This document shows positions 14,101 through 52,933 of a stretch of DNA of 64,000 nucleotides, piece after piece (the first letter of the stretch is position 1; each line of letters opens with the position of its first letter). Below the pieces are notes generated by a model. The model did not search any database and was not told where the DNA came from. It was given only the letters and a program-made list of their open reading frames with translations. The translations under genes and the position numbers were made by a program. The stretch lies in IMG/VR virus record IMGVR_UViG_3300028384_001500, positions 62,001-126,000 of that record. The stretch is one strand, 5' to 3'.

Positions 14101-17100
14101 TTAATCAGTTACTAAAGGTCTTACTTTTCTTGAACTAGTGCTAGCACCCCAATTAGGATCGTTAGATGCGTCAGTTAACCATATTGAATACGGCACCATT
14201 GTTTCAGGTTTCTCGCCCCACATTCTTAACCAGCCTGTGTTGTTTTCATAGTCTGTAATTTTAAGTCGATAAAAAGTCTTTTTATTCTTAGTTGTCTTTT
14301 TAATCATGTCAACAATACAACACCAAGCAATGCATTTTTCACCAGGTAACATTTTAAGAACTGACTTAACGCCTGCTGATTGTATTTTTTCCATCATATC
14401 ATCTGGGAAAGCAAGATCATCACGTGTTGCTGAACAAAGATCTTGATACATTGTTAACTTGTCAATTCTACCCCAGTCTTCAATGTCTTTTGTTTGATCA
14501 ATAAGAATAGGCAGGATAGGGTCAGCATCTTTTTTCTTTGCTTGCCGGAGTGTCATACCATACTTTGACTTTTTAAGTGTGTTATAATTTTCAATAATAA
14601 TTTCGTAAAGCTGTTTATGATTATTGATTGTTCCATCCCACATTTCTTGCAGGCCATTAAATGCCTCAACTTGACATAGAGATGCAAAACCGGTTTTGTT
14701 AAGTTTAGAGTGACGCCATTTACCTTCATCATTGAACAACATGTCAGCAACTGATTTATATGGCCTGTTTTGCATAATTTCAACAACTGCTGTTTTACCT
14801 ACACCTTTGATTGATGTTAAGGGTGGTATAAAGGCTTTTTTCTTATCAGACCATTGCCAATATGTACCTGATTCGTTAACATCTGGCAATTCAACACGGT
14901 AACCCATTTCTTTAATTTCAGCAATTGCCTTGGTTAATGCGTTAGGGTTATTGTTTTCTGACTCAAGAATAGTACCTAACCAGTCTGTTTCGTAGTAAGT
15001 ATGCAACCATGCTGCGTAATACGAACCGATTGCATATGCGACAGCATGCGACTTATTAAAACCATAAACTGAGAAGAATTCAATACGCTCCCATAGTTCT
15101 TGCGAGACATGCTCTGGCACACCATTAATTTCTTTCGCACCGGTTACAAACTTAATGCGTGCAGCTTCACGTTCATCACCTTTCTTACCCATTGTATCGA
15201 GAGATTTTTTAACCAAGGTTTTACGAAGTTTATCTGACTCAGCTGGTGTGAAACCGCCTAACTTTTGTGCAAGAAGCATAAACTGTTCTTGAAAGGTAAC
15301 ATGACCAAACGTCGGTCCAAGAATATCCTTAATGATAGGATGATCATAGTGGATTTCATCAGCACGCATTTTATCTTTTACATATTTCTTGTGCACGTTT
15401 GCTCGAAGTGGACCTGGTCGATAAATAGCTGTAAGTGCGGCTAATTCAATAATTGTTGTTGGTTTAGCATCTTCACAAAAGCGACGAGCACCTTCAGCAG
15501 TAAATTGAAAAACACCTACCTTGCGACGCTGATGGTATACATGTTTCCAAACCTCAGGATCGTCTTGTTCTACATAACGACAATTTAGATGCTTATCAAA
15601 CCAATCACGAATTTCTAGAAATGTAGGTTCTTTACCTGTTTCACGCGTCAAAATACGCTTAATGCAGTTTTCAACGTCTTTAAGTAGTGTTAAGCCAAGA
15701 AAGTCAAACTTAATAAACCCGTTATCTTCAAGATTACGAAAGTTCATACCTTCTGTCCACGGTGTTTGTAGTTCACCTCGCACACCAATAATAGGCATGC
15801 CGCGAGCTAAATCATCAGCTGGGCCAATAATAACACCACCTGCGTGTCGACCAATCGATCGATTTTGCATGAATAGTGCTTCGATATGATCCTTTACTTT
15901 TGGGTATTTTTCCATAAAAGAGCGGTAACCTTTTGAATATGTCATGCAGTCTTCGTGTTTAAGAACAAATACAGACTTTTCAGTATTTTCATCACGAGCT
16001 TGAGACATCACCTCATCTTGTAAAGGGCCGGTCATTTTATTTACTTCAGCAAAGTCGACACCGTAAAACTTAGCGATATCTTTAACAAGTGATTTAAGCT
16101 TAAGTGTGTTAAAGTTGGAGACAGGAATTACAGCTTCATCGCCATATAGTTCACGGGCAGCGTTAATTAGCGCATCACGATCACCAGCATCAGAGTCGAT
16201 ATCGGGCCACGAAGTACGATGTCGACCTAGAAAACGCTCCCATAGCAAATCATATTTAAGTGGATCAACTTGGGTAATCCCTAATAAGTAATTTACTAAT
16301 GAGCCTCCACCAGAGCCACGGGCTGCGCCAAATAGAGTATGATCTGCTGCCTTATGAAAGACTTCATTCATTACTAAGAAGTAGTTTTCGAATCCGAGGA
16401 ACTTGATGTCTTCGAGCTCGTGTTTTGCTCGTTCAACGTATTCAGTTTTTGTATGAAGGCCTTCTTTAACAAGTGCTTGTTTGACTTTTTGCGCCAGCTG
16501 TTGAAAAGCAGTTTGATTAGGGTTGTTGAAATCGGGAAGCTTAACAGAAGTATCAATCCAACAGTCTTCACACTTTTGCCATGCAATATCATGTGTAATT
16601 TCAATCGATCTTTTAATTGTTTCTTCATATCCTTCGTATGTTTCTTTATATTCGTCATAATGTCGTGTAAATTCATCCCACATCTGTGTTGCGTTCTTTG
16701 GATAAAGCTCACATTTTAGATCTTCAAACTCTGGTAACGGACTTGGGTCGTTACCCATCCACCCTAATTTTTTATAAAGTTCTCTTGCCTCCCATTTATC
16801 AGGTGAATAATAGTGTGAGTCTGGCGTGGATATCAGCTGTAAACCTGTTTGATCAGCATGCCGCAAGAGATGATGATTAACAAGGTGCTGCTGTTTAAGT
16901 CGATTAAATTGCAACTCTAAGTAGAAGTTATCTTCACCTACAGCGTCAACAAATCGCTCAGATAAGTATGACAGTTCTTGCTGAATTTGCTCGTCTGATA
17001 TTTTTAAAGCATTACCACGCATAATACGATTAGAATATATTCCACCTAGACAGGCTGTAGAAACATTGAGCCCTTTACCGTATTGTCTAAGCAGGTCAAA

Positions 17101-17619
17101 GTCAATACGAGGATATCTATAAAAGCCATCAGTATAAGCACGTTTAATTAGAGTAAATAAGTTACCTAAACCTTCACGGTTTTGCGCAGTAACTACCAGA
17201 TGATAACGTCGTTTCCATTCGTCTTTACCTAAATCAAAAGACTTAGTTTCTTCTTCGTTTTCAATGATATGACCACCTTCTTCCTCTTCTTTGATTGCCT
17301 TTTTCTTTGCAGCAGCTCGATCGATTTTAGCTTGTTCATAATCAGCTTTCCAGTCTTTAAGTGAAGGAACAAAATAAAACTCACAACCGTAAATCTGACG
17401 AAACTTACGACCAGACTTTTTAACTTTTTCAGCATGCTTATGAGCATGTGCCAATCCACTACCGTTTCCATGATCAGTTAATGCCCAAGCATCCATGCCG
17501 TTTTCTAGTACAAAGTCAATATGGTCAGAGGGGTACCCTAATCCATCAAAAACAGAAAAACCTGTGTGACCGTGAAAACCAACAAATCGATCGGGCGGGG
17601 TAAGTAATTTGATATCCAT
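14101..17619 (-). CDS. dnaE: DNA polymerase III alpha subunit (family C)
   Basis: PHP HGHTGFSVFDG/TDHG/DSH, GAARGSGGGSLV, PDIDSD, GRHAGG, KFDFLGL, FQF, YRPGP, YGFNKSHAVAY. Confidence 0.96.
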   Translation of the reverse strand: MDIKLLTPPDRFVGFHGHTGFSVFDGLGYPSDHIDFVLENGMDAWALTDHGNGSGLAHAHKHAEKVKKSGRKFRQIYGCEFYFVPSLKDWKADYEQAKIDRAAAKKKAIKEEEEGGHIIENEEETKSFDLGKDEWKRRYHLVVTAQNREGLGNLFTLIKRAYTDGFYRYPRIDFDLLRQYGKGLNVSTACLGGIYSNRIMRGNALKISDEQIQQELSYLSERFVDAVGEDNFYLELQFNRLKQQHLVNHHLLRHADQTGLQLISTPDSHYYSPDKWEARELYKKLGWMGNDPSPLPEFEDLKCELYPKNATQMWDEFTRHYDEYKETYEGYEETIKRSIEITHDIAWQKCEDCWIDTSVKLPDFNNPNQTAFQQLAQKVKQALVKEGLHTKTEYVERAKHELEDIKFLGFENYFLVMNEVFHKAADHTLFGAARGSGGGSLVNYLLGITQVDPLKYDLLWERFLGRHRTSWPDIDSDAGDRDALINAARELYGDEAVIPVSNFNTLKLKSLVKDIAKFYGVDFAEVNKMTGPLQDEVMSQARDENTEKSVFVLKHEDCMTYSKGYRSFMEKYPKVKDHIEALFMQNRSIGRHAGGVIIGPADDLARGMPIIGVRGELQTPWTEGMNFRNLEDNGFIKFDFLGLTLLKDVENCIKRILTRETGKEPTFLEIRDWFDKHLNCRYVEQDDPEVWKHVYHQRRKVGVFQFTAEGARRFCEDAKPTTIIELAALTAIYRPGPLRANVHKKYVKDKMRADEIHYDHPIIKDILGPTFGHVTFQEQFMLLAQKLGGFTPAESDKLRKTLVKKSLDTMGKKGDEREAARIKFVTGAKEINGVPEHVSQELWERIEFFSVYGFNKSHAVAYAIGSYYAAWLHTYYETDWLGTILESENNNPNALTKAIAEIKEMGYRVELPDVNESGTYWQWSDKKKAFIPPLTSIKGVGKTAVVEIMQNRPYKSVADMLFNDEGKWRHSKLNKTGFASLCQVEAFNGLQEMWDGTINNHKQLYEIIIENYNTLKKSKYGMTLRQAKKKDADPILPILIDQTKDIEDWGRIDKLTMYQDLCSATRDDLAFPDDMMEKIQSAGVKSVLKMLPGEKCIAWCCIVDMIKKTTKNKKTFYRLKITDYENNTGWLRMWGEKPETMVPYSIWLTDASNDPNWGASTSSRKVRPLVTD

Positions 17620-28784: not shown

Positions 28785-29594
28785 CTACTTTTGAAATGAT
28801 GGTACCCAATGTGTTGTTCTTTTATCAGCAGTTTTTTCTTTAATTACTGCCCTTCCATTTGGGTCAGTTTTCTGATTATACACTGCAAATCTTCGACTGT
28901 ACAATCCTTCCTTACCATTTGGTTGCCTATAACTTTCAATTGTTGCACCACCTATTTTGTACGATCTTTTTGATTGAGTAAACGTATTATAGTAAAGATC
29001 ATGCCATTCATCGTTAGATATGTCTTTAACCAATCGATTAGGTGATACTTTGGAATTCCAAAGAATTTCAGCCTTGAGGTAATTACCAACCCCTGAAATA
29101 ACTGATTGATTCATAAGACATTCCGCAATTGTTTTGTTTTGTTTTTTAATAAATCTATTTTTAAAACCTTTCCAATCGATATTTGCTGTTAAAACATCTG
29201 GACCTAATGAATTAAGCTTTTTATTTAAAACTTTTTTATCGTTAACAAATTTAAGTGTTCCAAAGTTTCTAATATCATTATAATAAAGTTCTGTTCCATC
29301 GTCAAAAAACATTACAAATCTTGCGTGTTTGTGTCGTTTATTACTCCACATACCAGTCATTCCTAGTGTACTAAAAAGATAATATTCGCTATAACCTTCA
29401 GTAAAGGTTATATAAATAAATTTACCTTTGCAATTTGCTGCATGAAATATTGCTGGTAAAGTAATAATATCTTCTCCGGGTATACTACCTTTTTTACTAT
29501 AACGACCGGATAATATTGAATATCCTGTCAAACCTTTTCCGTTAAATTGCGTTAAAAAGTCTGTTGTTGTTCTTACTTCTGGTCCTTCTGGCAT
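28785..29594 (-). CDS. mutM: Fpg/Nei DNA glycosylase-AP lyase (zincless finger)
   Basis: MPEGPEV, KGKF, LGMTG, NDIRNFG, LGPD, LMNQSVISGVGNYLKAE, RTTHWVP. Confidence 0.92.
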   Translation of the reverse strand: MPEGPEVRTTTDFLTQFNGKGLTGYSILSGRYSKKGSIPGEDIITLPAIFHAANCKGKFIYITFTEGYSEYYLFSTLGMTGMWSNKRHKHARFVMFFDDGTELYYNDIRNFGTLKFVNDKKVLNKKLNSLGPDVLTANIDWKGFKNRFIKKQNKTIAECLMNQSVISGVGNYLKAEILWNSKVSPNRLVKDISNDEWHDLYYNTFTQSKRSYKIGGATIESYRQPNGKEGLYSRRFAVYNQKTDPNGRAVIKEKTADKRTTHWVPSFQK

Positions 29595-41812: not shown

Positions 41813-44287
41813 TTATCCGCATTTACTGCTACCGCAAGACTTACATGTGACACAGCCTTCTTGATATACTAGGCTACCTTCTGCTCCACAGTGTGGGCAT
41901 TTTTTAGCAACCTTAGTTCCGTCGACAATGTAGTTTTTAAGACAGCGGGAAATAACCTTTGAAAAACTAAACATGTCCATTTCTTTGTCTTTTTGCATTT
42001 GTTCAACTAAGTACTGAACTGGTACTCCATGTCGCAAAGAAGTAGAAATAACTCTTGTATAACCGGCATGATTAGGATTGTCAAAGACAGATACTACGTC
42101 TTTTATAATAAGGGTATTATCGTCTTTTCCTACTGTTAGGTCGTATTTACTATTCTTGGTCTTGAAAACTCTTTTTTGGAGTTTACCATGTTTATATCTT
42201 GTCGGGATTTCTATCTGATCTGCTTCGCCGCCAATGACTTCATAAGGCATTCCGTCTAGGAGGCCAACTAACACTACCCATTTTTGTCCTTTAACAGACG
42301 TGTGGTATATGTCGCAATCTAACTCTTCCGGTCTTTTTGGCGCATCTCTTTCTACAATTTTATTATTATCTTCTTTCTTATCATCTGTTGAAACTAGCAC
42401 ACCTGATCGTGAACCATCGCGGTATACAGTCACACCTTTGCATCCGAGCTCCCAACCAAGCATGTAAATGTCTTTTACTGTCTCTACGTCAATGTCATTT
42501 GGAAGATTAGTAGTATTCGAGATAGCATGGCAGATCCACTTTTGTGCAACTGACTGGAGTTTCACCTTTGCACGCCAATCAATTTCATTAGCAGTGCCAC
42601 CATGATATGGAGAGCGTTCGATTGCTGTATCTACTTCCTCGTCAGAAACGTAATTCACGGCCATCCATTCTTTAAATTTGTGATGGTACACATTAAACTC
42701 TGTCCATTCGTCGCCAAGATCGTCTACAAACATCACCTTCTCACCGTTTTGCACTTTCTTACGTCTCTTGTAGTACAGCATGAAAGCAGGTTCAATACCT
42801 GATGTAGTTTGGGTGAGACATGACACTGAGCCGGCAGGTGCTGTTGTTGTGTTCGCAATGTTGCGACGTCCGTAAGTACGATAATCTTCAACAACTTCAG
42901 GCGTCAATTCGCTAATAACTCTTTTTAGGAAAGGGTGAACTTTTTCTTTTCTGTGATTAAATATTTCAAAAGCGCCTCTTTCTTTTGCAAGCTGAATAGA
43001 TTCTTCGTAAGAAGCAAGTGACAACCATTTATAGATCTCTTCAACTGTTTCGATTGATTTATCATCACCATATATCTGGCCTAACATAGCGATAGTGTCG
43101 CCTAATCCAGTTACACCTAGGCCAGTTCTACGACCGTTTTGAGCGACCTCTTTAATCTTAAGCCAGAGCTGTTTTTCTGGTAATTTTGTTTCATCTCCTT
43201 CGGGGTCGCTATCAATTTTTGCAAGAATTTTATCAATCTGTTCAATTTCAAGATCGATCATGTCGTCCATTAAGCGCTGAGCTTTTCGAGAATAGTTTCT
43301 AAACTTACCCCAATCGAAACTTGCTTTGTCTGTCCATGCGTTTTCTACGAAGGAGGTGAGGTTCATTAGCATAAGACGACATGAGTCATACGGGGAAAGG
43401 ATAATTTCTCCGCAAGGGTTCGTCGACACAGAGCCAAAACCTACATCCGAGTAAGCATCAGATGGAGTCATGCGTGTGGCTGTATCCCAGAAAAGAACGC
43501 CTGGTTCTGCTGATGCGTGTGCTCCTTCGATAAGTTCGTTCCAAACTTCTGTTGCTTTTAAGTGGTCATGAACTTCAGGATTATCTGAGTCGACTGGCCA
43601 TCGAACTGTATAGTGATCATCATTTTTTACAGCATTCATAAACTCGTCTGTGACGCGAACAGAGATATTGGCACCTGTCACTTTTGTCAAGTCTCGCTTA
43701 ATTCTAATAAAGTCTAGTACTTGTGGGTGGTGAACAGAGATTGAAAGCATTAATGCACCTCGGCGACCACCTTGTGCAACCTCTCGACATGAGTTTGAAA
43801 ACCTTTCTAAAAAGACCTCAATACCGTCTGTAGTTTTTGCTGCATTTGATGTGATCATTCCCTTAGGGCGAATAGTGGAAACATCAAAGCCTACGCCACC
43901 TCTTCGCTTCATAATCTGTACTTGCTCTTGGTCTGTCTTTAGAATCCCACCGTAAGAGTCTTCTGGCGCTTCAATTACAAAGCAGTTAGATATAGACTGT
44001 ATTTTTGCTTTATTTCCAATACCACTCATAGGTGATCCTTGAGGTACCACAAAGCGAAACCCTTGAAATAAGCCATATATCTCTTCAAAGCTCATTGGGT
44101 TGTCATATTTTTGTTCAATACGGGCAAATTCCTTTGCCAATCTTTTGTGCATATCATCCGGTGTTAATTCCAGATAACTGCCTTCTTCATCTTGCAATGC
44201 ATATTTTCCTGCAAAAACTGATGCTGCTAATTCGTCACCACCAAAATATTCTAGCGACGATTCATAAACCTTTTGATAATCGTACAT
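41813..44287 (-). CDS. nrdJ: Class II (B12-dependent) ribonucleotide reductase
   Basis: PQGSPM, SNCFV, QGGRRGALM, TNPCGEI, TTAPAGS, GCKGVTVYRDGSR, C-terminal Zn ribbon; no ATP cone and no beta subunit nearby. Confidence 0.9.
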   Translation of the reverse strand: MYDYQKVYESSLEYFGGDELAASVFAGKYALQDEEGSYLELTPDDMHKRLAKEFARIEQKYDNPMSFEEIYGLFQGFRFVVPQGSPMSGIGNKAKIQSISNCFVIEAPEDSYGGILKTDQEQVQIMKRRGGVGFDVSTIRPKGMITSNAAKTTDGIEVFLERFSNSCREVAQGGRRGALMLSISVHHPQVLDFIRIKRDLTKVTGANISVRVTDEFMNAVKNDDHYTVRWPVDSDNPEVHDHLKATEVWNELIEGAHASAEPGVLFWDTATRMTPSDAYSDVGFGSVSTNPCGEIILSPYDSCRLMLMNLTSFVENAWTDKASFDWGKFRNYSRKAQRLMDDMIDLEIEQIDKILAKIDSDPEGDETKLPEKQLWLKIKEVAQNGRRTGLGVTGLGDTIAMLGQIYGDDKSIETVEEIYKWLSLASYEESIQLAKERGAFEIFNHRKEKVHPFLKRVISELTPEVVEDYRTYGRRNIANTTTAPAGSVSCLTQTTSGIEPAFMLYYKRRKKVQNGEKVMFVDDLGDEWTEFNVYHHKFKEWMAVNYVSDEEVDTAIERSPYHGGTANEIDWRAKVKLQSVAQKWICHAISNTTNLPNDIDVETVKDIYMLGWELGCKGVTVYRDGSRSGVLVSTDDKKEDNNKIVERDAPKRPEELDCDIYHTSVKGQKWVVLVGLLDGMPYEVIGGEADQIEIPTRYKHGKLQKRVFKTKNSKYDLTVGKDDNTLIIKDVVSVFDNPNHAGYTRVISTSLRHGVPVQYLVEQMQKDKEMDMFSFSKVISRCLKNYIVDGTKVAKKCPHCGAEGSLVYQEGCVTCKSCGSSKCG

Positions 44288-44300
44288 TAAGTCTCCCTGA

Positions 44301-45683
44301 TTATTTTCCTGTTATCTCTTTCCATTTTGATTTAAGCATGTTTTTTGTTCCAACATTAGAGGCTTCAACTACATCTGCAATTGACATTTCTCCAACGTCT
44401 TCTAATACGTTAATTTTTGACATTGACGTATCGATACGGATTGGGAACATTAATCCGTCGCGACCTGCACGATTTTTTGCCACAAAGAGTCGACCTGCTC
44501 CTGTAGATTTTTCCATAGGCTTACGTGAAAGTGAAACAACAACATCTGCCACCATGGCTTTACCATATGCCTCAGACATATTTTCCAATCCTACAACATC
44601 AGCTTTAGCAGAGTCTCTGTTTGCTTGTGATGCTGTCCAGATAGGTATATTCATTTCCATTGCCAAGTTCCTAAGTTCTTCATATACTAATTTTAGTTCG
44701 TGTCTAAGTGAATCGTAAGTTCGTGTTGATCGCATAATATCCGCATAATCGATCACGAGTAAGCTCGGTTTGAAATCTTTCATAGCTAGTTTTTCTAGGT
44801 GATTTCTAATAGTTACGATGCTTGCCGCGCCGGTCGGGTATTGCTTAATTATTAAGCGACCATAGTCATTTTCTGAATAAGTTTCGAGTATTTTTTCTTT
44901 ATGTTGAATAACATTTGAAGATGGTATACTACATAAATTACTGTCGTATCTTATACCAACTGCAGTTTCAGTTAATTCAAAAGTATAATGAACTACATTT
45001 TTTCCACGACGCAATGCCTCAGCACCCATAGCAACTAGGTAATGAGATTTTCCAACCCCAGTATTAGCAACTACAACGCCAATTTCACCTCGTCCTAAGC
45101 CACCGTTTAAGACATCTTTTTTGTCCAAATGGCTAATACCTGTTGGGCATGTTGCACGATCAATAAGTTGAAAGCGCGCTTCATGGTCTTCAAAAAAGTC
45201 ATGACCTGTCGTTGATGAACTACCTTTAAAGACAGCATCTTTCATAATACTAAGAACAGACTCGTAATTTTCTGACTTAATTGCTTTTACACTATCTTCA
45301 AGTGCTTGTTGGAGTGCTTGTTTCTTGCAAAAGTCAAGCGATTTATCTTTTACGTACTTGAGATCTGTTAGGTTGGGATTTGCTTTCATGCGAGAAAGAT
45401 ATTCAATTACTTGTTCTCGAAGAATAACATCATCGCCAGTAGACAAATCATCCTTGATAATAGAAACTAATAATGGGAGTGTCGGGAAGTTCCTATATTT
45501 TTCATGAAAACTGAAAAATCTGTCACAAAGAAATTGGAGATATTTAAGTTCAAAGTAGTCATATTTCATTACCTCCATCATTTGTGAAGCCCAAGAATGA
45601 TCATCTAAAAGTGCTTGAAAAATCTTTTCTTGAAAATCTTTTCCGTATTTTGAAAAGTAATTGATATTTGCTGATGCGTTCAT
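44301..45683 (-). CDS. dnaB: DnaB/gp41-like replicative helicase
   Basis: ANTGVGKS, IDYAD, WTASQANR, KNRAG. Confidence 0.9.
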   Translation of the reverse strand: MNASANINYFSKYGKDFQEKIFQALLDDHSWASQMMEVMKYDYFELKYLQFLCDRFFSFHEKYRNFPTLPLLVSIIKDDLSTGDDVILREQVIEYLSRMKANPNLTDLKYVKDKSLDFCKKQALQQALEDSVKAIKSENYESVLSIMKDAVFKGSSSTTGHDFFEDHEARFQLIDRATCPTGISHLDKKDVLNGGLGRGEIGVVVANTGVGKSHYLVAMGAEALRRGKNVVHYTFELTETAVGIRYDSNLCSIPSSNVIQHKEKILETYSENDYGRLIIKQYPTGAASIVTIRNHLEKLAMKDFKPSLLVIDYADIMRSTRTYDSLRHELKLVYEELRNLAMEMNIPIWTASQANRDSAKADVVGLENMSEAYGKAMVADVVVSLSRKPMEKSTGAGRLFVAKNRAGRDGLMFPIRIDTSMSKINVLEDVGEMSIADVVEASNVGTKNMLKSKWKEITGK

Positions 45684-46660
45684 TATAAAATTTTTCCTTG
45701 TTTGAGGTTTCTAAAAAGATACCCATGTTGAAGAATATCAATGTTGTTTATATTATTTTCTTTTAGGTATTTTATTGCATTCATATTATTCCATGCCGGC
45801 TTAAAATTTTCAATGCTTTCATCAAGTTTTTTGGTTTGCATATGTACTAAGTTGTCTACATCCAATCTAACCAATCTAATATTACGCTCTATCAACTTTT
45901 CGTTATCTTTAATGGATTTATATATCTTTTTCTTTGGATTGTCTTGGTGTTTAACGTCGTTCTCTACAAATAATTGAAATGCATTACTTTCGAAGTCTTC
46001 TTTTTTAAGCAGATCTCCGTATTCCTTTACCAGTGTTTTATAACCAGCACCCGGGACTCCTGGAATATTATCTGACTTATCACCTACTATTGATTTAGCC
46101 AGGCAGAAGTTATGAGGATGAACACCATACTTTTCTAAGACTTTGTCCGTGTTAATAAATGACTTTGAGTTTGGAGAATACAGAATGCAATTCTCGTCAA
46201 CAAGTTGATAAAAATCATGATCGCCTGTAACAATAATCTTATTTTTATCTTTGAGTTTGTATTTTGCCATATAGCCAATTGCGTCGTCAGCCTCTGCGTC
46301 TTCTATGTAGACTTGACAGACAGGTAGGTTACTCAGTATTCCTACAAGATTTCTAATTTGAAAGTTTCTGTTTTCAACTGTGTCTGGTATTTCTTCTTTA
46401 TCATAATACCGATTCATCTTTGCCGGTCGACTTCCGCGTTTATAATCTGGATATAGATCTCTTTTTCGCTTGCTTCCTCCACCTTCCCAAACAACAATTA
46501 CACCTTCAGGCTTGCACTTTTCAATAAGGTTAATGAGATTGTAGTAAAAACCCACAATCCCGCCTATTTGTTCACCGTTTTCTGACATTGCCGGATGCGC
46601 TATATAATGCCTCATAAAAACATTGAGTGCATCAAATATAAGAATTCTGTCTTTTACCAT
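45683..46660 (-). CDS. 5'-3' exonuclease / flap endonuclease (T4 RNase H, Pol I N-terminal-like)
   Basis: LIFDALN, EADDAIG, TGDHDFYQL, GDKSDNIPGVPGAG. Confidence 0.92.
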   Translation of the reverse strand: MVKDRILIFDALNVFMRHYIAHPAMSENGEQIGGIVGFYYNLINLIEKCKPEGVIVVWEGGGSKRKRDLYPDYKRGSRPAKMNRYYDKEEIPDTVENRNFQIRNLVGILSNLPVCQVYIEDAEADDAIGYMAKYKLKDKNKIIVTGDHDFYQLVDENCILYSPNSKSFINTDKVLEKYGVHPHNFCLAKSIVGDKSDNIPGVPGAGYKTLVKEYGDLLKKEDFESNAFQLFVENDVKHQDNPKKKIYKSIKDNEKLIERNIRLVRLDVDNLVHMQTKKLDESIENFKPAWNNMNAIKYLKENNINNIDILQHGYLFRNLKQGKIL

Positions 46661-47826
46661 TATAAGTCACTCTCATCAAAGTCTAAGAGTAAATTACCAA
46701 CTTCTTTTACTTCCTCATATGACTCTGTGTCAATATCAACGCCGTCAGATGTGCCCATCTTTTTAATCATTGCGTCTTTAAGAATAATATTGACAATCGG
46801 ACCCCAGTAGTTATCTTCCATAATTTCGTTAAACTCAGTTTTTCTAAACTTTTTAGAGTCTATTTCACTACCGTTTTCATCCATAATTTGAATTGTTTTC
46901 CAGCCACCAGTACCAGAAACAAGATAACATCGATCTTTATGAGTTACCATGCCGTGTTTTCTTAATAAGTCAAAAGTCTCTTCATGTTCAACAATACCTT
47001 TTCCAAAGTGAATCTGGAATGCTACTTTTCTAAAAGGCGGTGCAACTTTGTTTTTAACCGTTTTAGCCCAAACATTAATACCGATAACGTCGTCACCATC
47101 TTTGATCTGTTGTCCCGCTCCCAATTTGATTCGTATAGATGAGTGAAAAGGGATTGCCTTACCTCCGGGTGTAGTATCAGGATCTCCATACATAACTCCT
47201 ACTTTTGTTCGTATTTGATTTAAGCAAACTAAAAGACTGTTTGTTTGCCCAATCACACCTGTAATTTTTCTCATACCTTTAGAAATAGCCCTTGCTTGGA
47301 GCCCAATACTTTCTTTGTCATAATCACCTAACAACTCTGCTTTTGGAGAAGATGCAGCAACACTATCCCATATAATAGTAACAGGTACATCTTTATCTAA
47401 AGCTCGTGCTTTAAGAATAGTTTTTTCAGCCAAATCAAGAACTTCTTCAGTACAATGTGTATCTACATATACAAACCTTTGAGAGACATCTACACCTAAG
47501 TTGCCTAAATTTTCAATACTTGTTGCGTTCTCAGTGTCGATGTAAACAACAATACCACCCATTTTTTGGGTACTTCTTGCAATTTGCGTGGCGATGTGAG
47601 ATTTTCCAATCGATGGCGGCCCGAACATTTCAACAATTCTTCCTTCTGGAAAACCTCCATTTTCTTGATTAGCACAGATATAGTCTAGCATTTTAGACCC
47701 TGTGCTAATCCATCTTTTTACTTGCGTAGGGCTTTCGTCTTCTGCAAGGTTATAAGCAACTTTTGTTTTATAATCTTTGTTTAAAGACTTAATAAGCTGC
47801 GAGGTAAAATCATCTTTCTTTCCCAT
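46660..47826 (-). CDS. recA: RecA/UvsX recombinase
   Basis: GPPSIGKS, YIDTE, WDSVAA, NQIR, PGGKA, KNKVAPPF. Confidence 0.94.
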   Translation of the reverse strand: MGKKDDFTSQLIKSLNKDYKTKVAYNLAEDESPTQVKRWISTGSKMLDYICANQENGGFPEGRIVEMFGPPSIGKSHIATQIARSTQKMGGIVVYIDTENATSIENLGNLGVDVSQRFVYVDTHCTEEVLDLAEKTILKARALDKDVPVTIIWDSVAASSPKAELLGDYDKESIGLQARAISKGMRKITGVIGQTNSLLVCLNQIRTKVGVMYGDPDTTPGGKAIPFHSSIRIKLGAGQQIKDGDDVIGINVWAKTVKNKVAPPFRKVAFQIHFGKGIVEHEETFDLLRKHGMVTHKDRCYLVSGTGGWKTIQIMDENGSEIDSKKFRKTEFNEIMEDNYWGPIVNIILKDAMIKKMGTSDGVDIDTESYEEVKEVGNLLLDFDESDL

Positions 47827-47876: not shown

Positions 47877-50381
47877 TCAATCAATAAGATTAATAATTTT
47901 TTGGCTTTTAATAATTTTTCTACGAATATTAGACTCCCACAATAAATCATCTAAAAACAAATTTTCTTTTAAATTTTCAGATTTACCCATAATAAAGTCA
48001 TATATTTTAATAATTTGATTAGGGGATAAATGACTTCCTGTTTTTGCACCAATAGCCTTCATTGTTTGTGGATCTTTTCTCATTTGATTATAAAAGTCTA
48101 ACCATGTCTTGTAATTTCCGTCGTTAACTTTACCTGCTGATGCTAACTCTTCAAACCCAGACTTGACTTTATTTCCGGCGTCTCCTGTTTTTGAAATATA
48201 GTATTCCCAAGACATTTTATTTTTTGGCTCACTTTCTTTTGTTGCTGATATAGTTTCTTTACCTTTATTTTTGATTTTTTTATTTTCTTCCCCTCCGGAA
48301 GGTGGTTTTACTGATATCTCTTTCTCTGCTGCTTTTCTTAACTTTTTAAATTCTGGATACCACGTTTCAGCATTTAAAAATCCTTTATCAAACAAACTTC
48401 TTAGTTTTTTGGCAATTTTTGCATTTTCTCCAGTAGCACTCGATAGTTTTTCACCATTTAGCATCATTATTCTTTCAATTGCTAGTAGGTTAAATAAAGC
48501 ACTGCGCCTTTTCTCATCAATATCTTTTGGATTAAGACCCTTAAAGTCTTTTTTTGCTGCAGCGTCAATAAAATCTTGTGCCCATTCATTTTCTTCATGC
48601 CACTTGGTAAACATTCCCGTATCAAGAACGCCAACTTTATCGGCTGCTTGCCGTCCAACACTGACGAATAAATCATTAGTATCTACTGTCATAAAGTCAT
48701 TAAATGGTTTTCCGATAAGAAAATAACCAGCTCCACCAGCTGCCGTCGCAGCAATTGTCGCGCCAAAAGCGACTCCTAAAGTCAATGCAAGGCCAGCACC
48801 AGCTGGTGCAGCTATAGCAAGTGTACCAAATCCAATTGTCATGTTTCCAGCTGCTATGGCTAACGCGTTATAAAACTCCTCATCATTGTATTCCTCGTTT
48901 GTAAAAGCGTTATACAGTTCGTAAAAACCAAATGCTAAGACGATTGCTGGGCCTAGCGCTTTTGCGAGACCGGTTACAAACTTTCCACTTGCGCTGACTG
49001 CCACTTCTGTAGATTCTTGTCCTGCATTTTTAGCTACTATTTCTGCAACTTCTTCACCCGGCAACGATCCCAGAAGTCCGTGAGCTCCTTGCTTTGCGAC
49101 TTCTTCAGAAATCTCACCACTACCGGCATTTACAATTTGTTGTGTCAATGCTGTCTCTAACTGAGGAGCTCCTTTAGCTATTTGTGCACCTTTTTCTATA
49201 GCGCCTTCAGCAAAATCTTTCACCACAAGCTCTGTGGTTCCAGAAGCTGTTTGTATTGCTGTTTTACTTGTGGTTTGCGCGCCTGTCTTTGTTAATCCTG
49301 TTTCAGCAGCTTGTGCTCCTGTTTTTGCTAATCCTGTTTCAGCAGCAGCTGATGCTTTCACGCCTAATTGTTTTCCTAGCTCTGCAAGAGCATCATCAGA
49401 CATACCAGCAGCTTGAGCTTGTGCCATTTTTTTAAGTGTCTCTTGGGAAACATCTTTAAAACCTTGCTCTGAAAGCGACTGGGAAATATTTTTAATAATT
49501 GCTTTTTCTAATTCTGGTGAATTTGCAAGTTTAGATGCACCTTTTTTAAAATATTCTTCTCCCAATTCGCTTGTCATTGCTGCAACTAAGTCATCAGGGG
49601 TCGACGATGCAGATGACGAAGCTACACTGGCTAGCCTTTGAGTACCTTGTGATTCAGCGGCTGGTGTTGTTGTTAAAGCAGTTGTCATTTTTTCTGTTGC
49701 AGCAACTTGGGAGGCGGGAGGAGGAGCTATAGCTTTAGTTGCATTAGTATGAACAGCTAGCGATGATTCTGGTGCTGCCGTATCAATTATTTTTTCCATA
49801 GGCAGTAATTTTTCAGCATTTTGAATAGCTTTTTTTGCTGCTTGTGATGTTGAATTAGATGACACTACAGCTGGAGTTCCTTTAGAAGTTTGAGCTACAA
49901 TTTTACCAGTATCAGTTGTTATTTTGTACTCTGTCCCACGCAAACCATTCATATATAGAACACTAGATCTAGAAATTGCGTCTTTAGATACTTTAATAGT
50001 TTCTGCAAAACCGGTTTTTGTTAAGACCTTACCTGTTTTGACACTAACTCTTGCTAAAACTGCTTCTCCTCCATCTACACCAATAACACGGTAAAGACCT
50101 TTACACCCTTTAGGTATTGTGTTGTTTGTAAAAATAGCTTTAGAAGTTGCTTTTGCGACACCCTTTACCGTATTAGGGCTTCTAATGACCTTACCATTCG
50201 TTGATACCATGATAAAATCACCCATTGCATCAGCTGATCCGGTAAGCAAAGACTCGTTTAAAATTGAATTATACCATCTTTGCTGACGCTTAATATTTTC
50301 ATGAATAATATTTTTTCCTTTTTCTCTTCGTATAGACTCTTCTAATAGTTTTCTAATCTGTAATCTTTTTAACTTTTTCAT
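47877..50381 (-). CDS. Leader-bearing large protein with an A/T/S/K-rich linker and a hydrophobic helical hairpin; possible ejected membrane protein
   Basis: MKKLKRLQIRKLLEES; hydrophobic ALGPAIVLAFGFY and GFGTLAIAAPAGAGLALTLGVAFGATIAATAAGGAGYFL. Confidence 0.6.
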   Translation of the reverse strand: MKKLKRLQIRKLLEESIRREKGKNIIHENIKRQQRWYNSILNESLLTGSADAMGDFIMVSTNGKVIRSPNTVKGVAKATSKAIFTNNTIPKGCKGLYRVIGVDGGEAVLARVSVKTGKVLTKTGFAETIKVSKDAISRSSVLYMNGLRGTEYKITTDTGKIVAQTSKGTPAVVSSNSTSQAAKKAIQNAEKLLPMEKIIDTAAPESSLAVHTNATKAIAPPPASQVAATEKMTTALTTTPAAESQGTQRLASVASSSASSTPDDLVAAMTSELGEEYFKKGASKLANSPELEKAIIKNISQSLSEQGFKDVSQETLKKMAQAQAAGMSDDALAELGKQLGVKASAAAETGLAKTGAQAAETGLTKTGAQTTSKTAIQTASGTTELVVKDFAEGAIEKGAQIAKGAPQLETALTQQIVNAGSGEISEEVAKQGAHGLLGSLPGEEVAEIVAKNAGQESTEVAVSASGKFVTGLAKALGPAIVLAFGFYELYNAFTNEEYNDEEFYNALAIAAGNMTIGFGTLAIAAPAGAGLALTLGVAFGATIAATAAGGAGYFLIGKPFNDFMTVDTNDLFVSVGRQAADKVGVLDTGMFTKWHEENEWAQDFIDAAAKKDFKGLNPKDIDEKRRSALFNLLAIERIMMLNGEKLSSATGENAKIAKKLRSLFDKGFLNAETWYPEFKKLRKAAEKEISVKPPSGGEENKKIKNKGKETISATKESEPKNKMSWEYYISKTGDAGNKVKSGFEELASAGKVNDGNYKTWLDFYNQMRKDPQTMKAIGAKTGSHLSPNQIIKIYDFIMGKSENLKENLFLDDLLWESNIRRKIIKSQKIINLID

Positions 50382-50487: not shown

Positions 50488-51279
50488 TTAACTCATAAGA
50501 TCAGAAAAAGCATCGTCTAGACTAGAGTAACTTTTTCCACCTTCGTCACTAGAGCTTTTAGAAGAAGTTTCATTGCTACTAGTCCATTCAGATCCAGTGC
50601 TTTCTGCTTCTTCTTCACCGTTAAGCCAGTTATTGATAATATTACTTAGTTCGTCGTATGACTTAAGTCTAAAAATATTATTAATATCTGGAATACCGTC
50701 TACCCATTCTTTTGCTTGACTCTTATCTTTAGAAAGAGCAGATGCTTTACGAACAGGGAGTACTTCAGTTTTTGCCCATTGTTGGCCAGGTGATTTAGTA
50801 CATTTAATCTTAAGATCAGTGCCTGTTTTAAGATCTGTAATATCACCGTAGTCTTCATCCATCATAAGTGATAGTAGCGACTGATACACTAATTTACCAA
50901 ATGACCAAATACGTACACCTTCACCTTCTTCACCTCGTACAACGACTGGTGCGTATACACGCATTTTAGGATACAATTTTTTTGCCATTTCATAGCTTTC
51001 TTTTGTTCCTTCGTCGCGAAGCTTATTAATCAACTCTTGGATTGGGTCACGCTTACCAAATTGGCTTGGTGCCAGTAATCCTCGTTGACCGGGAATATTG
51101 TAGTAGAATTGTAATTCTTTGAATGGTTGCCCGTCGTTATCAGGAAAAGAAAGAAGTCTTACTTTATATTCTTGCCCCTCTTCAGGTTTCCACATTACAT
51201 TTCTGCTAGTGTTATTACCGCTAAGTTTGTCTAGTTTACGTTTAATCGCATCAAAATCAAGTGCCATTATTTCCTCCAT
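50488..51279 (-). CDS. T4 gp32-like single-stranded DNA-binding protein
   Basis: VMWKP, VRLL, VVRGEEGEGVRIWSFGK, DITDLKTGTDL, acidic tail LDDAFSDLMS. Confidence 0.8.
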   Translation of the reverse strand: MEEIMALDFDAIKRKLDKLSGNNTSRNVMWKPEEGQEYKVRLLSFPDNDGQPFKELQFYYNIPGQRGLLAPSQFGKRDPIQELINKLRDEGTKESYEMAKKLYPKMRVYAPVVVRGEEGEGVRIWSFGKLVYQSLLSLMMDEDYGDITDLKTGTDLKIKCTKSPGQQWAKTEVLPVRKASALSKDKSQAKEWVDGIPDINNIFRLKSYDELSNIINNWLNGEEEAESTGSEWTSSNETSSKSSSDEGGKSYSSLDDAFSDLMS

Positions 51280-51365: not shown

Positions 51366-51854
51366 TTACTTGTAAGGAAAACTTTTTTCTCTATTGAACT
51401 TTTGACGCTTTTTTCTTTGTCTTACAGTCTCTGGTCGACCTTTACTAGTAAAGCCCATAGGAACAGCTGGGCCGGCTACGCCTCCTGCGGACATCTCATC
51501 AATCATATCGTCTAGGCCTTCTAAGTCTTCAACCTTTTCTTTACTTTTTCTAGACTGTCTAACTAGCTTTTGGTTCATTGCGTTAAGATCGTCTACACTG
51601 GTCTCAAAAATATTTTCTAGCGTTTCTACTAACATATATTTTCCTGCGCGATAAACTCTACATTCTAATATAATGTCTTCGTCGTCTTCTTCCATTTCAT
51701 CAAATTCGTAACCTTTATTTACCCTTTGAGAGTATCTAGAAAAAGCTGTATCAGCATCTGCCAAAGGTGCTGTTGTATTTTTATGCCTGTAACCACCTGC
51801 ACCAAAACCATCCGGTCTAAATGCACCCATTCCTATTTCTTTTAATTTTTTCAT
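51366..51854 (-). CDS. Hypothetical late protein
   Basis: EMSAGGVAGPAVPMG motif; ATAGTTA upstream. Confidence 0.6.
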   Translation of the reverse strand: MKKLKEIGMGAFRPDGFGAGGYRHKNTTAPLADADTAFSRYSQRVNKGYEFDEMEEDDEDIILECRVYRAGKYMLVETLENIFETSVDDLNAMNQKLVRQSRKSKEKVEDLEGLDDMIDEMSAGGVAGPAVPMGFTSKGRPETVRQRKKRQKFNREKSFPYK

Positions 51855-51865
51855 AATAATAACTA

Positions 51866-52933
51866 TTATGAATATACTTTAAATTCTATCGGAATTGTAA
51901 TGTTGCTTATTTTTTCTGTTATACTTTTAATGTTTTTTAATTCTTTTAGTCTAGACTTTTCTATTTGAAATGTCATGCTATCATGTATAAAAAAACATCT
52001 GTCTACTTTTAAAGTCTGGGCAAAGTCATAGAAAGCCAAAGAGCAATAATCAACAGCAGAAGACTGAATCCAGTAGTTGATTAAATTGCTGTCGCTTGTA
52101 ATTGGACGTCCGTAATAGTTAAGCATAAAACCATTATCTTCAAACTCTTTTGTTAAATCGCTATTAAGTTTGTTAAGTCCTATTTCTTCCTTAATTTTTC
52201 TTACATTCGTGACACTAGTTTGCATAATTCTAGAAATAGTGTTTTCATTTGCGCCATATATCATCGATAGTATACCTCGTTTAAAACTATCACGGTCAGT
52301 AATTTTTACATTATAGTTATTAGATATCCATTGATATACATCTTTTACGCCTTTCAAATCATAGCCTTTTGATAGTAAATAAAAGAAAGGTTCGCAAGAT
52401 TTAAAATCAACCTCAACCAATACCTTACTATCATCAATTGACTTAAGTCTGTAACGATTTTCTTTTTTCATTGTTAAGAAATTATAGCCCTTATGTATAC
52501 CGGTTCTTCCTGTCACACCGGCGTGATTATAGTGTGGTACTTCTAATATTTCACCGTTCAAACTAACATTTTTAAGATCTAGATAACACTTTTTCCTAAT
52601 TGGGAATATTGATGTGTGATAATTAGTAACTAAATTAATAGTATCTTTAATAGAGTTAAATAAATACTCAGTGTATTCTCTGGACTTAGGTTTACCTAGT
52701 AATTTATTCACCTCAAGACTACCTGAAATATTTAAGCAGTTTAACCCTGGATAGTATTCTTTTACAGTTTTAATCTTATCTAAGTTAGACAATTGTCTAA
52801 TATTTGATAGTGATTGAATTGTTAAAGTTGTCTTAGCTTTCTCAGATATGCTAATAGATATATCTTTTTTGTTCAAAGAATAATCTTTATTAATAACAAC
52901 TGAATTTATAATTTCTTTATTTCTAATACTCAT
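51866..52933 (-). CDS. Minimal family-A DNA polymerase domain
   Basis: Motif A EVDFKSCEP, motif B RDSFKRGILSMIYG, YYGR, NYWIQSSAVD, motif C IHDS. Confidence 0.75.
   Translation of the reverse strand: MSIRNKEIINSVVINKDYSLNKKDISISISEKAKTTLTIQSLSNIRQLSNLDKIKTVKEYYPGLNCLNISGSLEVNKLLGKPKSREYTEYLFNSIKDTINLVTNYHTSIFPIRKKCYLDLKNVSLNGEILEVPHYNHAGVTGRTGIHKGYNFLTMKKENRYRLKSIDDSKVLVEVDFKSCEPFFYLLSKGYDLKGVKDVYQWISNNYNVKITDRDSFKRGILSMIYGANENTISRIMQTSVTNVRKIKEEIGLNKLNSDLTKEFEDNGFMLNYYGRPITSDSNLINYWIQSSAVDYCSLAFYDFAQTLKVDRCFFIHDSMTFQIEKSRLKELKNIKSITEKISNITIPIEFKVYS

What the first reader, a model, noticed from the sequence alone, without database searches (positions are those of the whole stretch)
51866..52933. 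Minimal 355-aa family-A polymerase: Pol I split into stand-alone parts
Seen: motifs A, B and C with both catalytic Asp residues, but no 3'-5' exonuclease and little thumb. A separate 5'-3' exonuclease lies at 45683-46660, and DnaE is also present. Known: Klenow-type fragments are about 600 aa. Inference: a gap-filling or primer-synthesis enzyme working with the FEN and Fpg, possibly because host Pol I handles modified DNA poorly.
Basis: partly seen in the sequence, partly recalled or inferred. Interest (0 to 1): 0.6.

Follow-up and report, generated by a model that had tools for sequence, protein, structure and literature searches.

The report
Compact exonuclease-less phage family-A polymerase
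This is an intact, conserved 355-residue DNA polymerase of the Pol I family, stripped of its proofreading domain, that a large uncultured marine phage carries beside its main DnaE replicase; it belongs to a recently described class of "divergent PolA" accessory polymerases whose job is still untested.

Summary
The ORF at 51866-52933 (-) is real, intact and 355 aa long. It is a complete but compacted family-A polymerase domain. Motif 2 (TGR), motif A (D176, steric-gate E181), motif B (R214, K218, Y226), Q290 and motif C (H317-D318) are invariant in its relatives. The AlphaFold2 model (pLDDT 93) matches Pol nu, Pol theta, Bst, T7, Klenow and Taq at Z about 20. There is no 3'-5' exonuclease domain, and the thumb and fingers are shortened.

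It is not a decaying fragment. More than 150 clusters keep the same length, and dN/dS is 0.08.

The window lies in a 237-kb IMG/VR phage record. The gene heads a conserved module: mini-PolA, a disordered ORF, gp32-like SSB, RecA, FEN, DnaB, RNR. DnaE lies about 35 kb downstream in every relative whose contig reaches that far. The same gene order follows "divPolA1" in Flavobacterium phage immuto (Yutin et al. 2024), so this is a new, more reduced member of a known class.

The protein evolves about five times less constrained than SSB, RecA or DnaE. That argues for an accessory role, most likely Pol I-like gap filling with FEN and ligase. A recent split of a Pol I gene is not supported. A primer-making role is unlikely because a DnaG-type primase is present.

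The parts
51866..52933 (-). mini-PolA: 355-aa family-A DNA polymerase domain (palm, fingers, shortened thumb) with no exonuclease domain
   Evidence: ORF. Pfam and PHROG family-A hits. 157 homologues of the same length. AF2 model pLDDT 92.9. VIA Z about 20 to Pol nu, Pol theta, Bst, T7, Klenow and Taq. hhalign to E. coli Pol I residues 696-918. dN/dS 0.08.
52505..52513 (-). Motif 2, T141-G142-R143 (equivalent to Pol I T666-G667-R668, a primer-terminus contact)
   Evidence: Invariant in A1 and in both tiers of the superfamily. Coordinates checked.
52385..52420 (-). Motif A, LVEVDFKSCEPF: catalytic D176 (= D705) and steric-gate E181 (= E710)
52250..52294 (-). Motif B (O-helix), RDSFKRGILSMIYGA: R214, K218, L222 (position B3, = F762) and Y226
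52049..52078 (-). Motif 6, NYWIQSSAVD: N286 (= N845), Q290 (= Q849), D295
51971..51994 (-). Motif C, FFIHDSMT: H317-D318 (= H881-D882). The E883 position is Ser.
51366..51854 (-). ORF162: conserved gene immediately downstream. Mostly disordered, with an acidic middle and a basic C-terminal tail. Function unknown.
   Evidence: Homologues directly follow the polymerase gene in most related loci, some with large insertions. No Pfam or PHROG hit.
50488..51279 (-). gp32-like single-stranded-DNA-binding protein
   Evidence: Pfam gp32 E = 6e-10, phrog_1192 E = 8e-21. It is the second gene downstream in nearly all related loci, at 60-93% identity.
46660..47826 (-). RecA/UvsX-type recombinase
   Evidence: Pfam RecA E = 1.5e-65.
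45683..46660 (-). Stand-alone 5'-3' exonuclease / flap endonuclease (FEN)
   Evidence: Pfam 5_3_exonuc_N E = 2.4e-26 and 5_3_exonuc E = 1.4e-9.
44301..45683 (-). DnaB-type replicative helicase
   Evidence: Pfam DnaB_C E = 7.6e-19, phrog_19 E = 6e-66.
41813..44287 (-). Ribonucleotide reductase large subunit (end of the conserved module)
   Evidence: Pfam Ribonuc_red_lgC E = 1e-87.
14101..17619 (-). DnaE-type DNA polymerase III alpha (PHP, NTPase, finger and HhH domains): the presumed main replicase
   Evidence: 91% identical in relative G001, where mini-PolA is 52% identical. Found 31-41 kb from mini-PolA in five related contigs.

Best explanation
The gene encodes an active, template-dependent DNA polymerase of family A. 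It is reduced to a compact polymerase domain of 355 aa with no proofreading domain and a shortened thumb and fingers. It is the marine, DnaE-linked counterpart of the 'divPolA1' accessory polymerases of Flavobacterium phage immuto and its relatives.

It heads a conserved replication and recombination module: mini-PolA, ORF162, gp32-like SSB, RecA, FEN, DnaB, RNR. It works beside DnaE, not instead of it.

Most likely mechanism (inferred, not shown): short-patch synthesis. It would fill the gaps left when the stand-alone FEN removes the primers laid by the phage's DnaG-type primase, after which the phage ATP-dependent ligase seals the nicks. FEN, mini-PolA and ligase would together do in trans what bacterial Pol I and ligase do.

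Shown: the fold, the conserved active site, the synteny, the co-occurrence with DnaE and the relaxed constraint. Inferred: the substrate and the partners.
For: Identity:
- Motifs 2, A, B, 6 and C are invariant and map onto Pol I catalytic residues.
- The steric-gate Glu is invariant, as in DNA polymerases and unlike RNA polymerases.
- The AF2 model has pLDDT 92.9, with Z 19-20 to solved family-A DNA polymerases.

Intact and selected:
- 157 word-search hits, nearly all 340-370 aa.
- 223 representatives at E <= 1e-30, and none over 443 aa in the top 150.
- dN/dS is 0.08.

Context:
- The same module order occurs in relatives at 52%, 37% and 31% identity.
- It also occurs in immuto phage after its divPolA1 gene. 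The module proteins are homologous: SSB 36%, FEN 31%, DnaB 33%.

Accessory status:
- DnaE is present here and in 5 of 10 related contigs. The other five are cut off on the side where DnaE would lie.
- There is no PolB and no second PolA.
- Mini-PolA is 52% identical between two phages whose DnaE, RecA and DnaB are 87-91% identical.
- Its dN/dS is five to six times that of SSB and RecA at a similar dS.

Lagging-strand kit:
- DnaG-type primase, ATP-dependent ligase and a DnaQ-like exonuclease are in the same genome.

Literature:
- divPolA1 is described with the same features (PMC11348598, section 13).
Against: - No biochemical data exist for any member.
- Sequence similarity to the published divPolA1 representative that I could reach is weak: 24% over 243 aa at E = 1e-3, and hhalign E = 6.7e-5 at probability 64%. 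The A1 profile did not find it in a genome scan. Membership therefore rests largely on synteny and shared architecture.
- According to the paper, divPolA1 also co-occurs with family-A and family-B replicases. Those would not obviously need a separate gap filler, so the conserved role may be something other than Pol I-like maturation.
- E883 is lost across the superfamily. In Klenow this residue matters for catalysis (my recollection, not checked here).
- No transcript evidence was found for the gene.
Confidence: 0.6

Rival explanations
1. It is a recombination or repair polymerase. It would extend RecA/UvsX-made D-loops (recombination-dependent replication) or perform translesion or gap synthesis on damaged DNA, as the exonuclease-less eukaryotic family-A enzymes Pol theta and Pol nu do.
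For: The best sequence and fold matches among solved structures are Pol nu and Pol theta (E = 4.5e-6, Z = 20.1). The gene sits two genes from SSB and four from RecA. It lacks proofreading and has a reduced thumb. If divPolA1 co-occurs with A-, B- and C-family replicases (PMC11348598), a role independent of the replicase fits better than Okazaki maturation.
Against: Z scores to Pol nu and Pol theta are tied with those to Bst, T7, Klenow and Taq, so they carry no specific signal. None of the Pol theta-type insertions is evident in a 355-aa protein. Position B3 is Leu or Ile, which in Taq was reported to give a slower but more accurate enzyme (cited in PMC6302109). That is not an obvious translesion signature.
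Confidence: 0.22
2. It is the catalytic subunit of a PolA-based primase or initiator, like CcPol-MP of SCCmec elements. A truncated N-terminus would bind a small ssDNA-binding partner (ORF162 or the gp32-like SSB), allowing de novo DNA synthesis for DnaB.
For: CcPol is a family-A polymerase with a truncated exonuclease domain. It primes only with the small protein encoded just downstream, and it sits next to a helicase (PMC7581432, PMC10061031, PMC10201439 section 32). Here a conserved small ORF directly follows the polymerase gene and an SSB follows that, across deep divergence.
Against: The genome has a conventional DnaG-type primase (phrog_47, E = 7e-41; Zn-ribbon). ORF162 is predicted to be mostly disordered, not an OB fold (the partner's fold was uncertain). 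No interaction evidence was obtained.
Confidence: 0.08
3. It is the true replicative polymerase of the phage, and DnaE is the auxiliary enzyme.
For: The polymerase heads the conserved replisome module with SSB and DnaB. DnaE lies 35 kb away among nucleotide-metabolism genes. Yutin et al. note that the context of the 'regular' polymerases is less clearly replicative.
Against: It diverges far faster than DnaE and the other replisome proteins (52% against 91% identity; dN/dS 0.08 against 0.014-0.016). It has no proofreading domain, a reduced thumb and no detectable clamp or processivity partner. For a genome of 240 kb or more, an exonuclease-less enzyme of low processivity is an unlikely replicase.
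Confidence: 0.06
4. It is a degenerate or inactive remnant, or it has another chemistry such as RNA polymerase, reverse transcriptase or terminal transferase.
For: The Pfam score is below the gathering threshold. The third active-site carboxylate (E883) is lost. Motif C reads HDS, as in T7-type RNA polymerases (my recollection).
Against: All other catalytic and substrate-binding residues are invariant over hundreds of clusters. The steric-gate Glu that excludes rNTPs is invariant. Length is conserved and purifying selection is strong.
Confidence: 0.04

Closest known systems
divPolA1 (Yutin et al. [quoted passage not shown]
   Same: It is a divergent family-A polymerase with catalytic palm residues kept, a truncated thumb and no working 3'-5' exonuclease. 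It is encoded in addition to a 'regular' polymerase. It is followed by the same genes: one or two small ORFs, SSB, RecA-like recombinase, 5'-3' exonuclease, DnaB, RNR. The module proteins are homologous.
   Different: It has 355 aa against 441 aa in immuto; about 80 fewer residues precede the TGR motif. It is only 24% identical. The host genome is at least 237 kb with DnaE, whereas immuto is 160 kb without DnaE. I could not reach the marine GOV-bin members of the published set, which may be closer.
CcPol-MP / PolA-SSB primases of SCCmec and other Bacillota mobile elements (PMC7581432, PMC10061031)
   Same: It is a family-A polymerase with a truncated N-terminal (exonuclease) region and an intact polymerase active site. 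A small conserved ORF lies immediately downstream, and a helicase lies in the same cluster.
   Different: CcPol keeps part of the exonuclease domain, and its partner MP is an OB fold. Here the downstream ORF looks disordered, a separate gp32-like SSB and a DnaG-type primase are present, and the element is a lytic-type jumbo phage, not an integrative island. Priming was not tested.
Split exo/pol T7-like PolA of cyanophage S-SBP1 and relatives (Czernecki et al. 2023, PMC10201439)
   Same: The polymerase domain is encoded as a stand-alone gene without the 3'-5' exonuclease.
   Different: In S-SBP1 the exonuclease gene lies directly upstream, the split is a recent frameshift, and the enzyme is the replicase. 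Here no PolA-type exonuclease exists anywhere in the 237 kb held, the lineage is old and large, and DnaE is present.
Bacterial Pol I large fragments (Klenow, KlenTaq/Stoffel, Bst LF)
   Same: It has the same fold (Z 18-20) and the same catalytic residues. A functional analogy exists if it is paired with a FEN.
   Different: The large fragments have about 540-605 aa and include a real or vestigial exonuclease domain. Sequence similarity is marginal (E = 0.26 to Klenow). F762 is replaced by Leu or Ile and E883 by Ser or Ala. The thumb is 18 residues shorter and the motif A to motif C stretch is about 35 residues shorter.
Pol nu / Pol theta polymerase domains
   Same: They are the best sequence and fold hits. 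They are family-A enzymes that work without proofreading.
   Different: They are eukaryotic, much larger and carry lineage-specific inserts. Their scores are tied with those of other family-A polymerases.

Membership tests
Family A DNA polymerases (Pol I-like polymerase domain) | Right-hand fold with the family-A palm, fingers and thumb | tested here: met
   AF2 model pLDDT 92.9. Foldseek E about 1e-12. VIA Z 18-20 to more than 40 solved family-A polymerases, e.g. 258 residues at 3.3 A to Taq.
Family A DNA polymerases (Pol I-like polymerase domain) | Motifs A, B and C with the two metal-binding Asp, the O-helix Arg, Lys and Tyr, and His-Asp in motif C | tested here: met
   D176, R214, K218, Y226, H317 and D318 are invariant and align to D705, R754, K758, Y766, H881 and D882. 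They are conserved in both tiers of the superfamily. The third carboxylate E883 is not kept.
Family A DNA polymerases (Pol I-like polymerase domain) | Score above the Pfam DNA_pol_A gathering threshold | tested here: not met
   27.5 bits against a cut-off of 34.3, covering only the C-terminal half. Many homologues and the roughly 400-aa sister family do pass it. This is a sensitivity limit, not evidence against homology.
Family A DNA polymerases (Pol I-like polymerase domain) | DNA-dependent DNA polymerase activity | not testable with these tools
   Needs a primer-extension assay.
divPolA1 (Yutin et al. 2024) | Palm catalytic residues conserved, thumb truncated, 3'-5' exonuclease lacking or inactive | tested here: met
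   No PF01612 hit in the protein or the genome.
divPolA1 (Yutin et al. 2024) | Encoded in addition to a 'regular' DNA polymerase of family A, B or C | tested here: met
   DnaE is in the same genome and in every related contig that reaches the expected position.
divPolA1 (Yutin et al. 2024) | Conserved arrangement of replication genes downstream | tested here: met
   The window order equals the immuto order gp1 to gp10. SSB, FEN and DnaB are homologous at E = 1e-43 to 1e-68.
divPolA1 (Yutin et al. 2024) | Sequence homology closer to published divPolA1 than to other PolA subfamilies | tested here: inconclusive
   BLASTP gives 24% over 243 aa, E = 1e-3 in a 9-protein database. hhalign gives E = 6.7e-5 at probability 64%, compared with E = 1.7e-5 at probability 79% to E. 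coli Pol I. The profile scan of the immuto genome found nothing. The other published members (LR796625, MK892584) are not in the collections held.
PolA-SSB primases (CcPol-MP type) | Family-A polymerase with a truncated N-terminal domain, plus an OB-fold partner encoded directly downstream that binds it | tested here: inconclusive
   The truncated N-terminus and the conserved downstream ORF are present. The ORF looks disordered, and no interaction evidence was obtained.
PolA-SSB primases (CcPol-MP type) | Primer-independent DNA synthesis | not testable with these tools
   Needs a biochemical assay. A DnaG-type primase in the genome lowers the prior.
Bacterial DNA polymerase I (polA orthologue, or a recent fission product of it) | Fused or adjacent 5' nuclease and 3'-5' exonuclease parts, with close sequence similarity to cellular Pol I | tested here: not met
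   The FEN gene is 5.2 kb away with four genes between. There is no PolA-type exonuclease in the genome. Profile E to Klenow is 0.26. The family is phage-specific, with all Atlas clusters labelled Uroviricota.

The most novel reading that the evidence does not exclude
The compact polymerase, together with the fast-evolving disordered ORF162 and the gp32-like SSB that always follow it, forms a PolA-based initiator or primase (a phage counterpart of CcPol-MP), or some other specialised start-up polymerase for DnaB-driven replication. Its unusually fast evolution, compared with the rest of the replisome, would then reflect an arms race with host defences, not simple relaxation.
Probability: 0.1. 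Interest if true: 0.7.

Novelty: new member of a known kind. Interest (0 to 1): 0.35.

Why it matters
Short, proofreading-less family-A polymerases turn out to be a large superfamily specific to uncultured phages: at least 150 clusters at 50% identity and 1,369 representatives at E <= 1e-3. They sit at the head of the replication module of big marine myophages. No member has been assayed.

At 355 aa this is among the smallest natural family-A polymerase domains with a full set of catalytic residues. That makes it a convenient object for asking what the thumb tip, the third carboxylate and the exonuclease scaffold contribute. It could also serve as a compact enzyme scaffold.

Biologically it raises a question. 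Phages that already carry a DnaE (or, in relatives, PolA or PolB) replicase universally keep a second, fast-evolving polymerase next to SSB, RecA, FEN and DnaB. Why they do so is unknown.

Tried and rejected
- **Cultured phages.** Megablast of the region and tblastn of the protein against 50,697 phage records gave no match. DnaE and RecA found only distant relatives at 40% identity or less. The phage therefore has no cultured close relative.
- **Moraphage and marine jumbo-phage papers.** They describe PolB or other lineages, or mention only Pol III alpha (PGC_A). None describes this polymerase.
- **Complex prediction, mini-PolA with ORF162.** No verdict. This is not evidence either way.
- **Public reads.** Only small shares of the stretch were found. 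RNA-library contigs cover the SSB gene of relatives but not the polymerase gene. Nothing can be said about expression.
- **A1 profile scan of the immuto genome.** Nothing was found. BLAST and phmmer of immuto gp1 against my 275 collected proteins gave only weak hits.
- **GOV-bin and LR79 records of the divPolA1 paper.** They are not in the collections held.
- **Decaying fragment or frameshift.** Rejected because length is conserved and dN/dS is 0.08.
- **Trans-acting PolA-type exonuclease gene.** Rejected because PF01612 is absent. The DnaQ-like exonuclease at G000:C1:4438-5043 more likely serves DnaE; this was not tested.
- **N-terminal 35-60 residues as a vestige of the exonuclease domain.** The aligned ranges disagree between entries, so this is left open.
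Full report
**Observation**

The minus-strand ORF 51866-52933 starts with ATG, encodes 355 residues and has no stops. Sequence libraries recognise it only weakly:
- Pfam DNA_pol_A scores 27.5 bits, below the 34.3 cut-off, and matches only the C-terminal half of the model.
- PHROG 'DNA polymerase I' gives E = 2.5e-4.

In an alignment of 30 homologues at 34-93% identity, these residues are invariant:
- T141-G142-R143
- D176 and E181
- R214, K218 and Y226
- N272, G275, R276 and P277
- N286, Q290, S291, S292 and D295
- H317 and D318

A profile-profile alignment with E. coli Pol I places residues 167-355 on Pol I 696-918. It equates D176 with D705, E181 with E710 (the steric gate against rNTPs), R214/K218/Y226 with R754/K758/Y766, Q290 with Q849, and H317-D318 with H881-D882. 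Motif coordinates were checked by translation.

**Fold and anatomy**

AlphaFold2 on that alignment gives a confident model (pLDDT 92.9, pTM 0.89).
- Foldseek finds family-A polymerases at E about 1e-12.
- VIA-align gives Z = 18-20 to Pol nu, Pol theta, Bst, T7, Klenow, Taq, M. smegmatis Pol1 and the apicoplast polymerase. The match to Taq, for example, covers 258 residues at 3.3 A.

Only 140 residues precede the TGR motif, against 145 in the polymerase domain of Pol I alone. There is therefore no room for an exonuclease domain.
- The stretch from the NGVKID-like strand to TGR is 105 residues, against 123 in Pol I.
- The stretch from motif A to motif C is 142 residues, against 177 in Pol I (D176 to D318 against D705 to D882).
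- The tail after motif C is 37 residues, against 46 in Pol I.

The protein is thus a whole but compacted polymerase domain, with a short thumb and trimmed fingers. 'Little thumb' is half right.

The first 35 residues or so form a small beta unit. Whether it is a vestige of the exonuclease domain I could not settle, because the aligned ranges differ between entries.

Two active-site departures hold across the whole superfamily:
- The F762 position (B3) is always Leu or Ile.
- The E883 position is Ser here and mostly Ala elsewhere.

**Not a fragment**

- The word-index search found 157 relatives, almost all 340-370 aa, from marine metagenomes.
- The exhaustive profile search found 1,369 representatives at E <= 1e-3 and 223 at E <= 1e-30.
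- The top 150 representatives fall into a tier of about 335-365 aa and a tier of about 380-443 aa. None is longer.
- The longer tier passes the Pfam threshold and keeps the same catalytic residues.
- Against a 91%-identical copy (L006), dN/dS is 0.08.

**What the genome is**

The window is bases 62001-126000 of a 236,652-bp IMG/VR virus record estimated to be 77% complete. Nearly every gene is on one strand. There is no close cultured relative.

The polymerase gene follows baseplate and large structural genes. It opens a replication and recombination block:
- ORF162 (no family hit)
- gp32-like SSB
- an 834-aa ORF
- RecA/UvsX
- FEN
- DnaB
- RNR

Other relevant genes:
- DnaE with its PHP domain lies 35 kb further on, among nucleotide-metabolism genes. 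These include ThyX, thymidine kinase, a thymidylate-kinase-like protein and Fpg.
- Outside the window, the record encodes a DnaG-type primase (phrog_47, E = 7e-41), a DnaQ-like 'polymerase exonuclease subunit' and an ATP-dependent ligase.
- No PolB, no PolA-type exonuclease, no beta-clamp and no delta-type clamp loader were detected. The record is incomplete, so these absences are provisional.

**Conservation of context**

The same order recurs in:
- a 202-kb contig, at 52% polymerase identity;
- a 146-kb contig, at 37% identity;
- two NCBI assemblies;
- around the roughly 410-aa sister family, at 31% identity.

In 55 IMG/VR loci the gene directly downstream is usually an ORF162 homologue, sometimes with large insertions. 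The next gene is the gp32-like SSB.

DnaE is found 31-41 kb from the polymerase gene in five of ten long related contigs. In the other five, the contig ends before the expected position. None has PolB or a second PolA.

**Rate of evolution**

Between this phage and the 202-kb relative, amino-acid identity is:

| Protein | Identity |
|---|---|
| DnaE | 91% |
| RecA | 90% |
| DnaB | 87% |
| SSB | 84% |
| FEN | 80% |
| RNR | 79% |
| mini-PolA | 52% |
| ORF162 | 43% |

In the close pair, dS is similar for all genes (0.30-0.69), but dN/dS differs:

| Gene | dN/dS |
|---|---|
| mini-PolA | 0.08 |
| ORF162 | 0.13 |
| SSB | 0.014 |
| RecA | 0.016 |

The enzyme is therefore selected but much less constrained than the core replisome. 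This argues against it being the main replicase and for an accessory role. An arms-race reading is not excluded.

**Comparison with what is known**

Yutin et al. (2024, PMC11348598, section 13) describe 'divPolA1'. [quoted passage not shown] Its published features are:
- a divergent PolA present in addition to a regular polymerase of family A, B or C;
- conserved palm residues, a truncated thumb and a dead or absent exonuclease;
- a conserved set of replication genes downstream.

The immuto record shows gp1 (441 aa, 'DNA polymerase family A'), two small ORFs, SSB, recombinase, 5'-3' exonuclease, DnaB and RNR. This is the same order as here.

The module proteins are clearly homologous: SSB 36% (E = 2.5e-43), FEN 31% (E = 6e-44) and DnaB 33% (E = 5e-68). 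The polymerases are only marginally alike: 24% over 243 aa at E = 1e-3, and hhalign E = 6.7e-5.

I therefore file the gene as a new, more reduced member of the divPolA1 kind. The sequence-level test is inconclusive, and the marine members of the published set could not be fetched.

Other comparators:
- CcPol-MP PolA-SSB primases (PMC7581432, PMC10061031) share the truncated N-terminus and a small downstream partner gene.
- The S-SBP1-type split T7-like polymerase (PMC10201439, section 32) is a recent fission with the exonuclease gene adjacent. That is not the case here.

**Mechanism**

The fold, active site, context and accessory status are shown. The job is inferred.

- **Most economical reading (about 0.4 for this specific role).** DnaE replicates. 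The DnaG-type primase primes. The FEN removes primers. The compact polymerase fills the gaps. The ligase seals the nicks. This is Pol I function supplied in trans.
- **Recombination or repair synthesis next to RecA and SSB (0.22).** This is the main rival. It would explain better why divPolA1 persists whichever replicase family a phage carries.
- **CcPol-like priming (0.08).** This is made less likely by the conventional primase.
- **True replicase (0.06).** This is made unlikely by the fast evolution, the lack of proofreading and the short thumb.
- **Inactivity or another chemistry (0.04).** This is made unlikely by the invariant active site and the steric-gate Glu.

'Split Pol I' holds as a functional analogy only. 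The lineage is old and phage-specific, it is no closer to bacterial Pol I than to Pol nu, and stand-alone FENs are common in phages. The links to Fpg and to modified DNA have no support.

**Attempts without result**

The complex prediction with ORF162 gave no verdict. The read and contig mapping found no polymerase transcripts. Neither counts for or against any hypothesis.

**Verdict**

It belongs to a class described in 2024 whose biochemistry is unknown. Interest is moderate.

Noticed in passing
window 51866-52933 and 51366-51854, against 14101-17619, 44301-47826 and 50488-51279: The polymerase and ORF162 diverge far faster than the rest of the replisome. Between two phages they are 52% and 43% identical, against 79-91% for the other replication proteins. 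Their dN/dS is 0.08-0.13, against about 0.015, at a similar dS. Whether this is relaxation or an arms race is unexplained.
   Followed up: partly
window 51366-51854 (-): The ORF162 family has conserved N-terminal (MKKxKEIGxGxFRP) and C-terminal (GGxxGPxVPxG...QRKKRQKFNxxKSFPY) motifs around an acidic, variable middle. Some homologues carry 250-350-aa insertions or a C-terminal extension. It has no family hit.
   Followed up: partly
window 47877-50381 (-): An 834-aa Ala/Gly/Thr-rich ORF with a hydrophobic stretch lies between SSB and RecA and has no Pfam or PHROG hit. Relatives have a 218-aa or other ORF at this place. It is a variable insert in an otherwise conserved module.
   Followed up: no
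G000:C1:4438-5043 (-), outside the window (L081): A stand-alone DnaQ/RNase T-type exonuclease is present (PF00929 E = 1.5e-15; phrog_192 'DNA polymerase exonuclease subunit' E = 3.8e-34). It could proofread for DnaE or, in trans, for the mini-PolA.
   Followed up: partly
G000:C1:166854-167819 (-) and 6345-7601 (-), outside the window (L080, L081): A DnaG-type primase (321 aa) and an ATP-dependent DNA ligase (418 aa) complete a lagging-strand tool kit.
   Followed up: yes
window 28785-29594 (-), 25690-26676 (-), 4671-5249 (-), 9689-10600 (-): Fpg/Nei-type glycosylase, ThyX, thymidine kinase and a thymidylate-kinase-like protein form a nucleotide-metabolism and repair block between DnaE and the lysis genes. 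I saw no evidence of DNA hypermodification genes.
   Followed up: no
window 50488-51279: Contigs 90-95% identical to the gp32-like SSB gene are present in marine RNA libraries (X16, X18, X20). None of these covers the polymerase gene.
   Followed up: partly
P0050 (homologue, 52% identity): A full-length homologue is filed in a eukaryote transcriptome set (EukProt, Siedleckia nematoides). This is probably phage or bacterial carry-over in the sample.
   Followed up: no
L084, L085 (NCBI assemblies GCA_902586775.1 and GCA_902549725.1): Related phage contigs with the same module sit inside NCBI assemblies filed as genomes (GCA accessions). This may give a host clue for the lineage.
   Followed up: no
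146-kb ENA contig carrying P0111 (no DNA held): In this distant relative the RNR large-subunit gene is interrupted by intein-like sequences (Pfam Intein_splicing), and two extra genes (519 and 365 aa) lie between the polymerase and SSB.
   Followed up: no
L008 5059-10004: In the sister lineage, three DUF4379 paralogues and an N6/N4 DNA methyltransferase lie directly upstream of the 411-aa short PolA.
   Followed up: no
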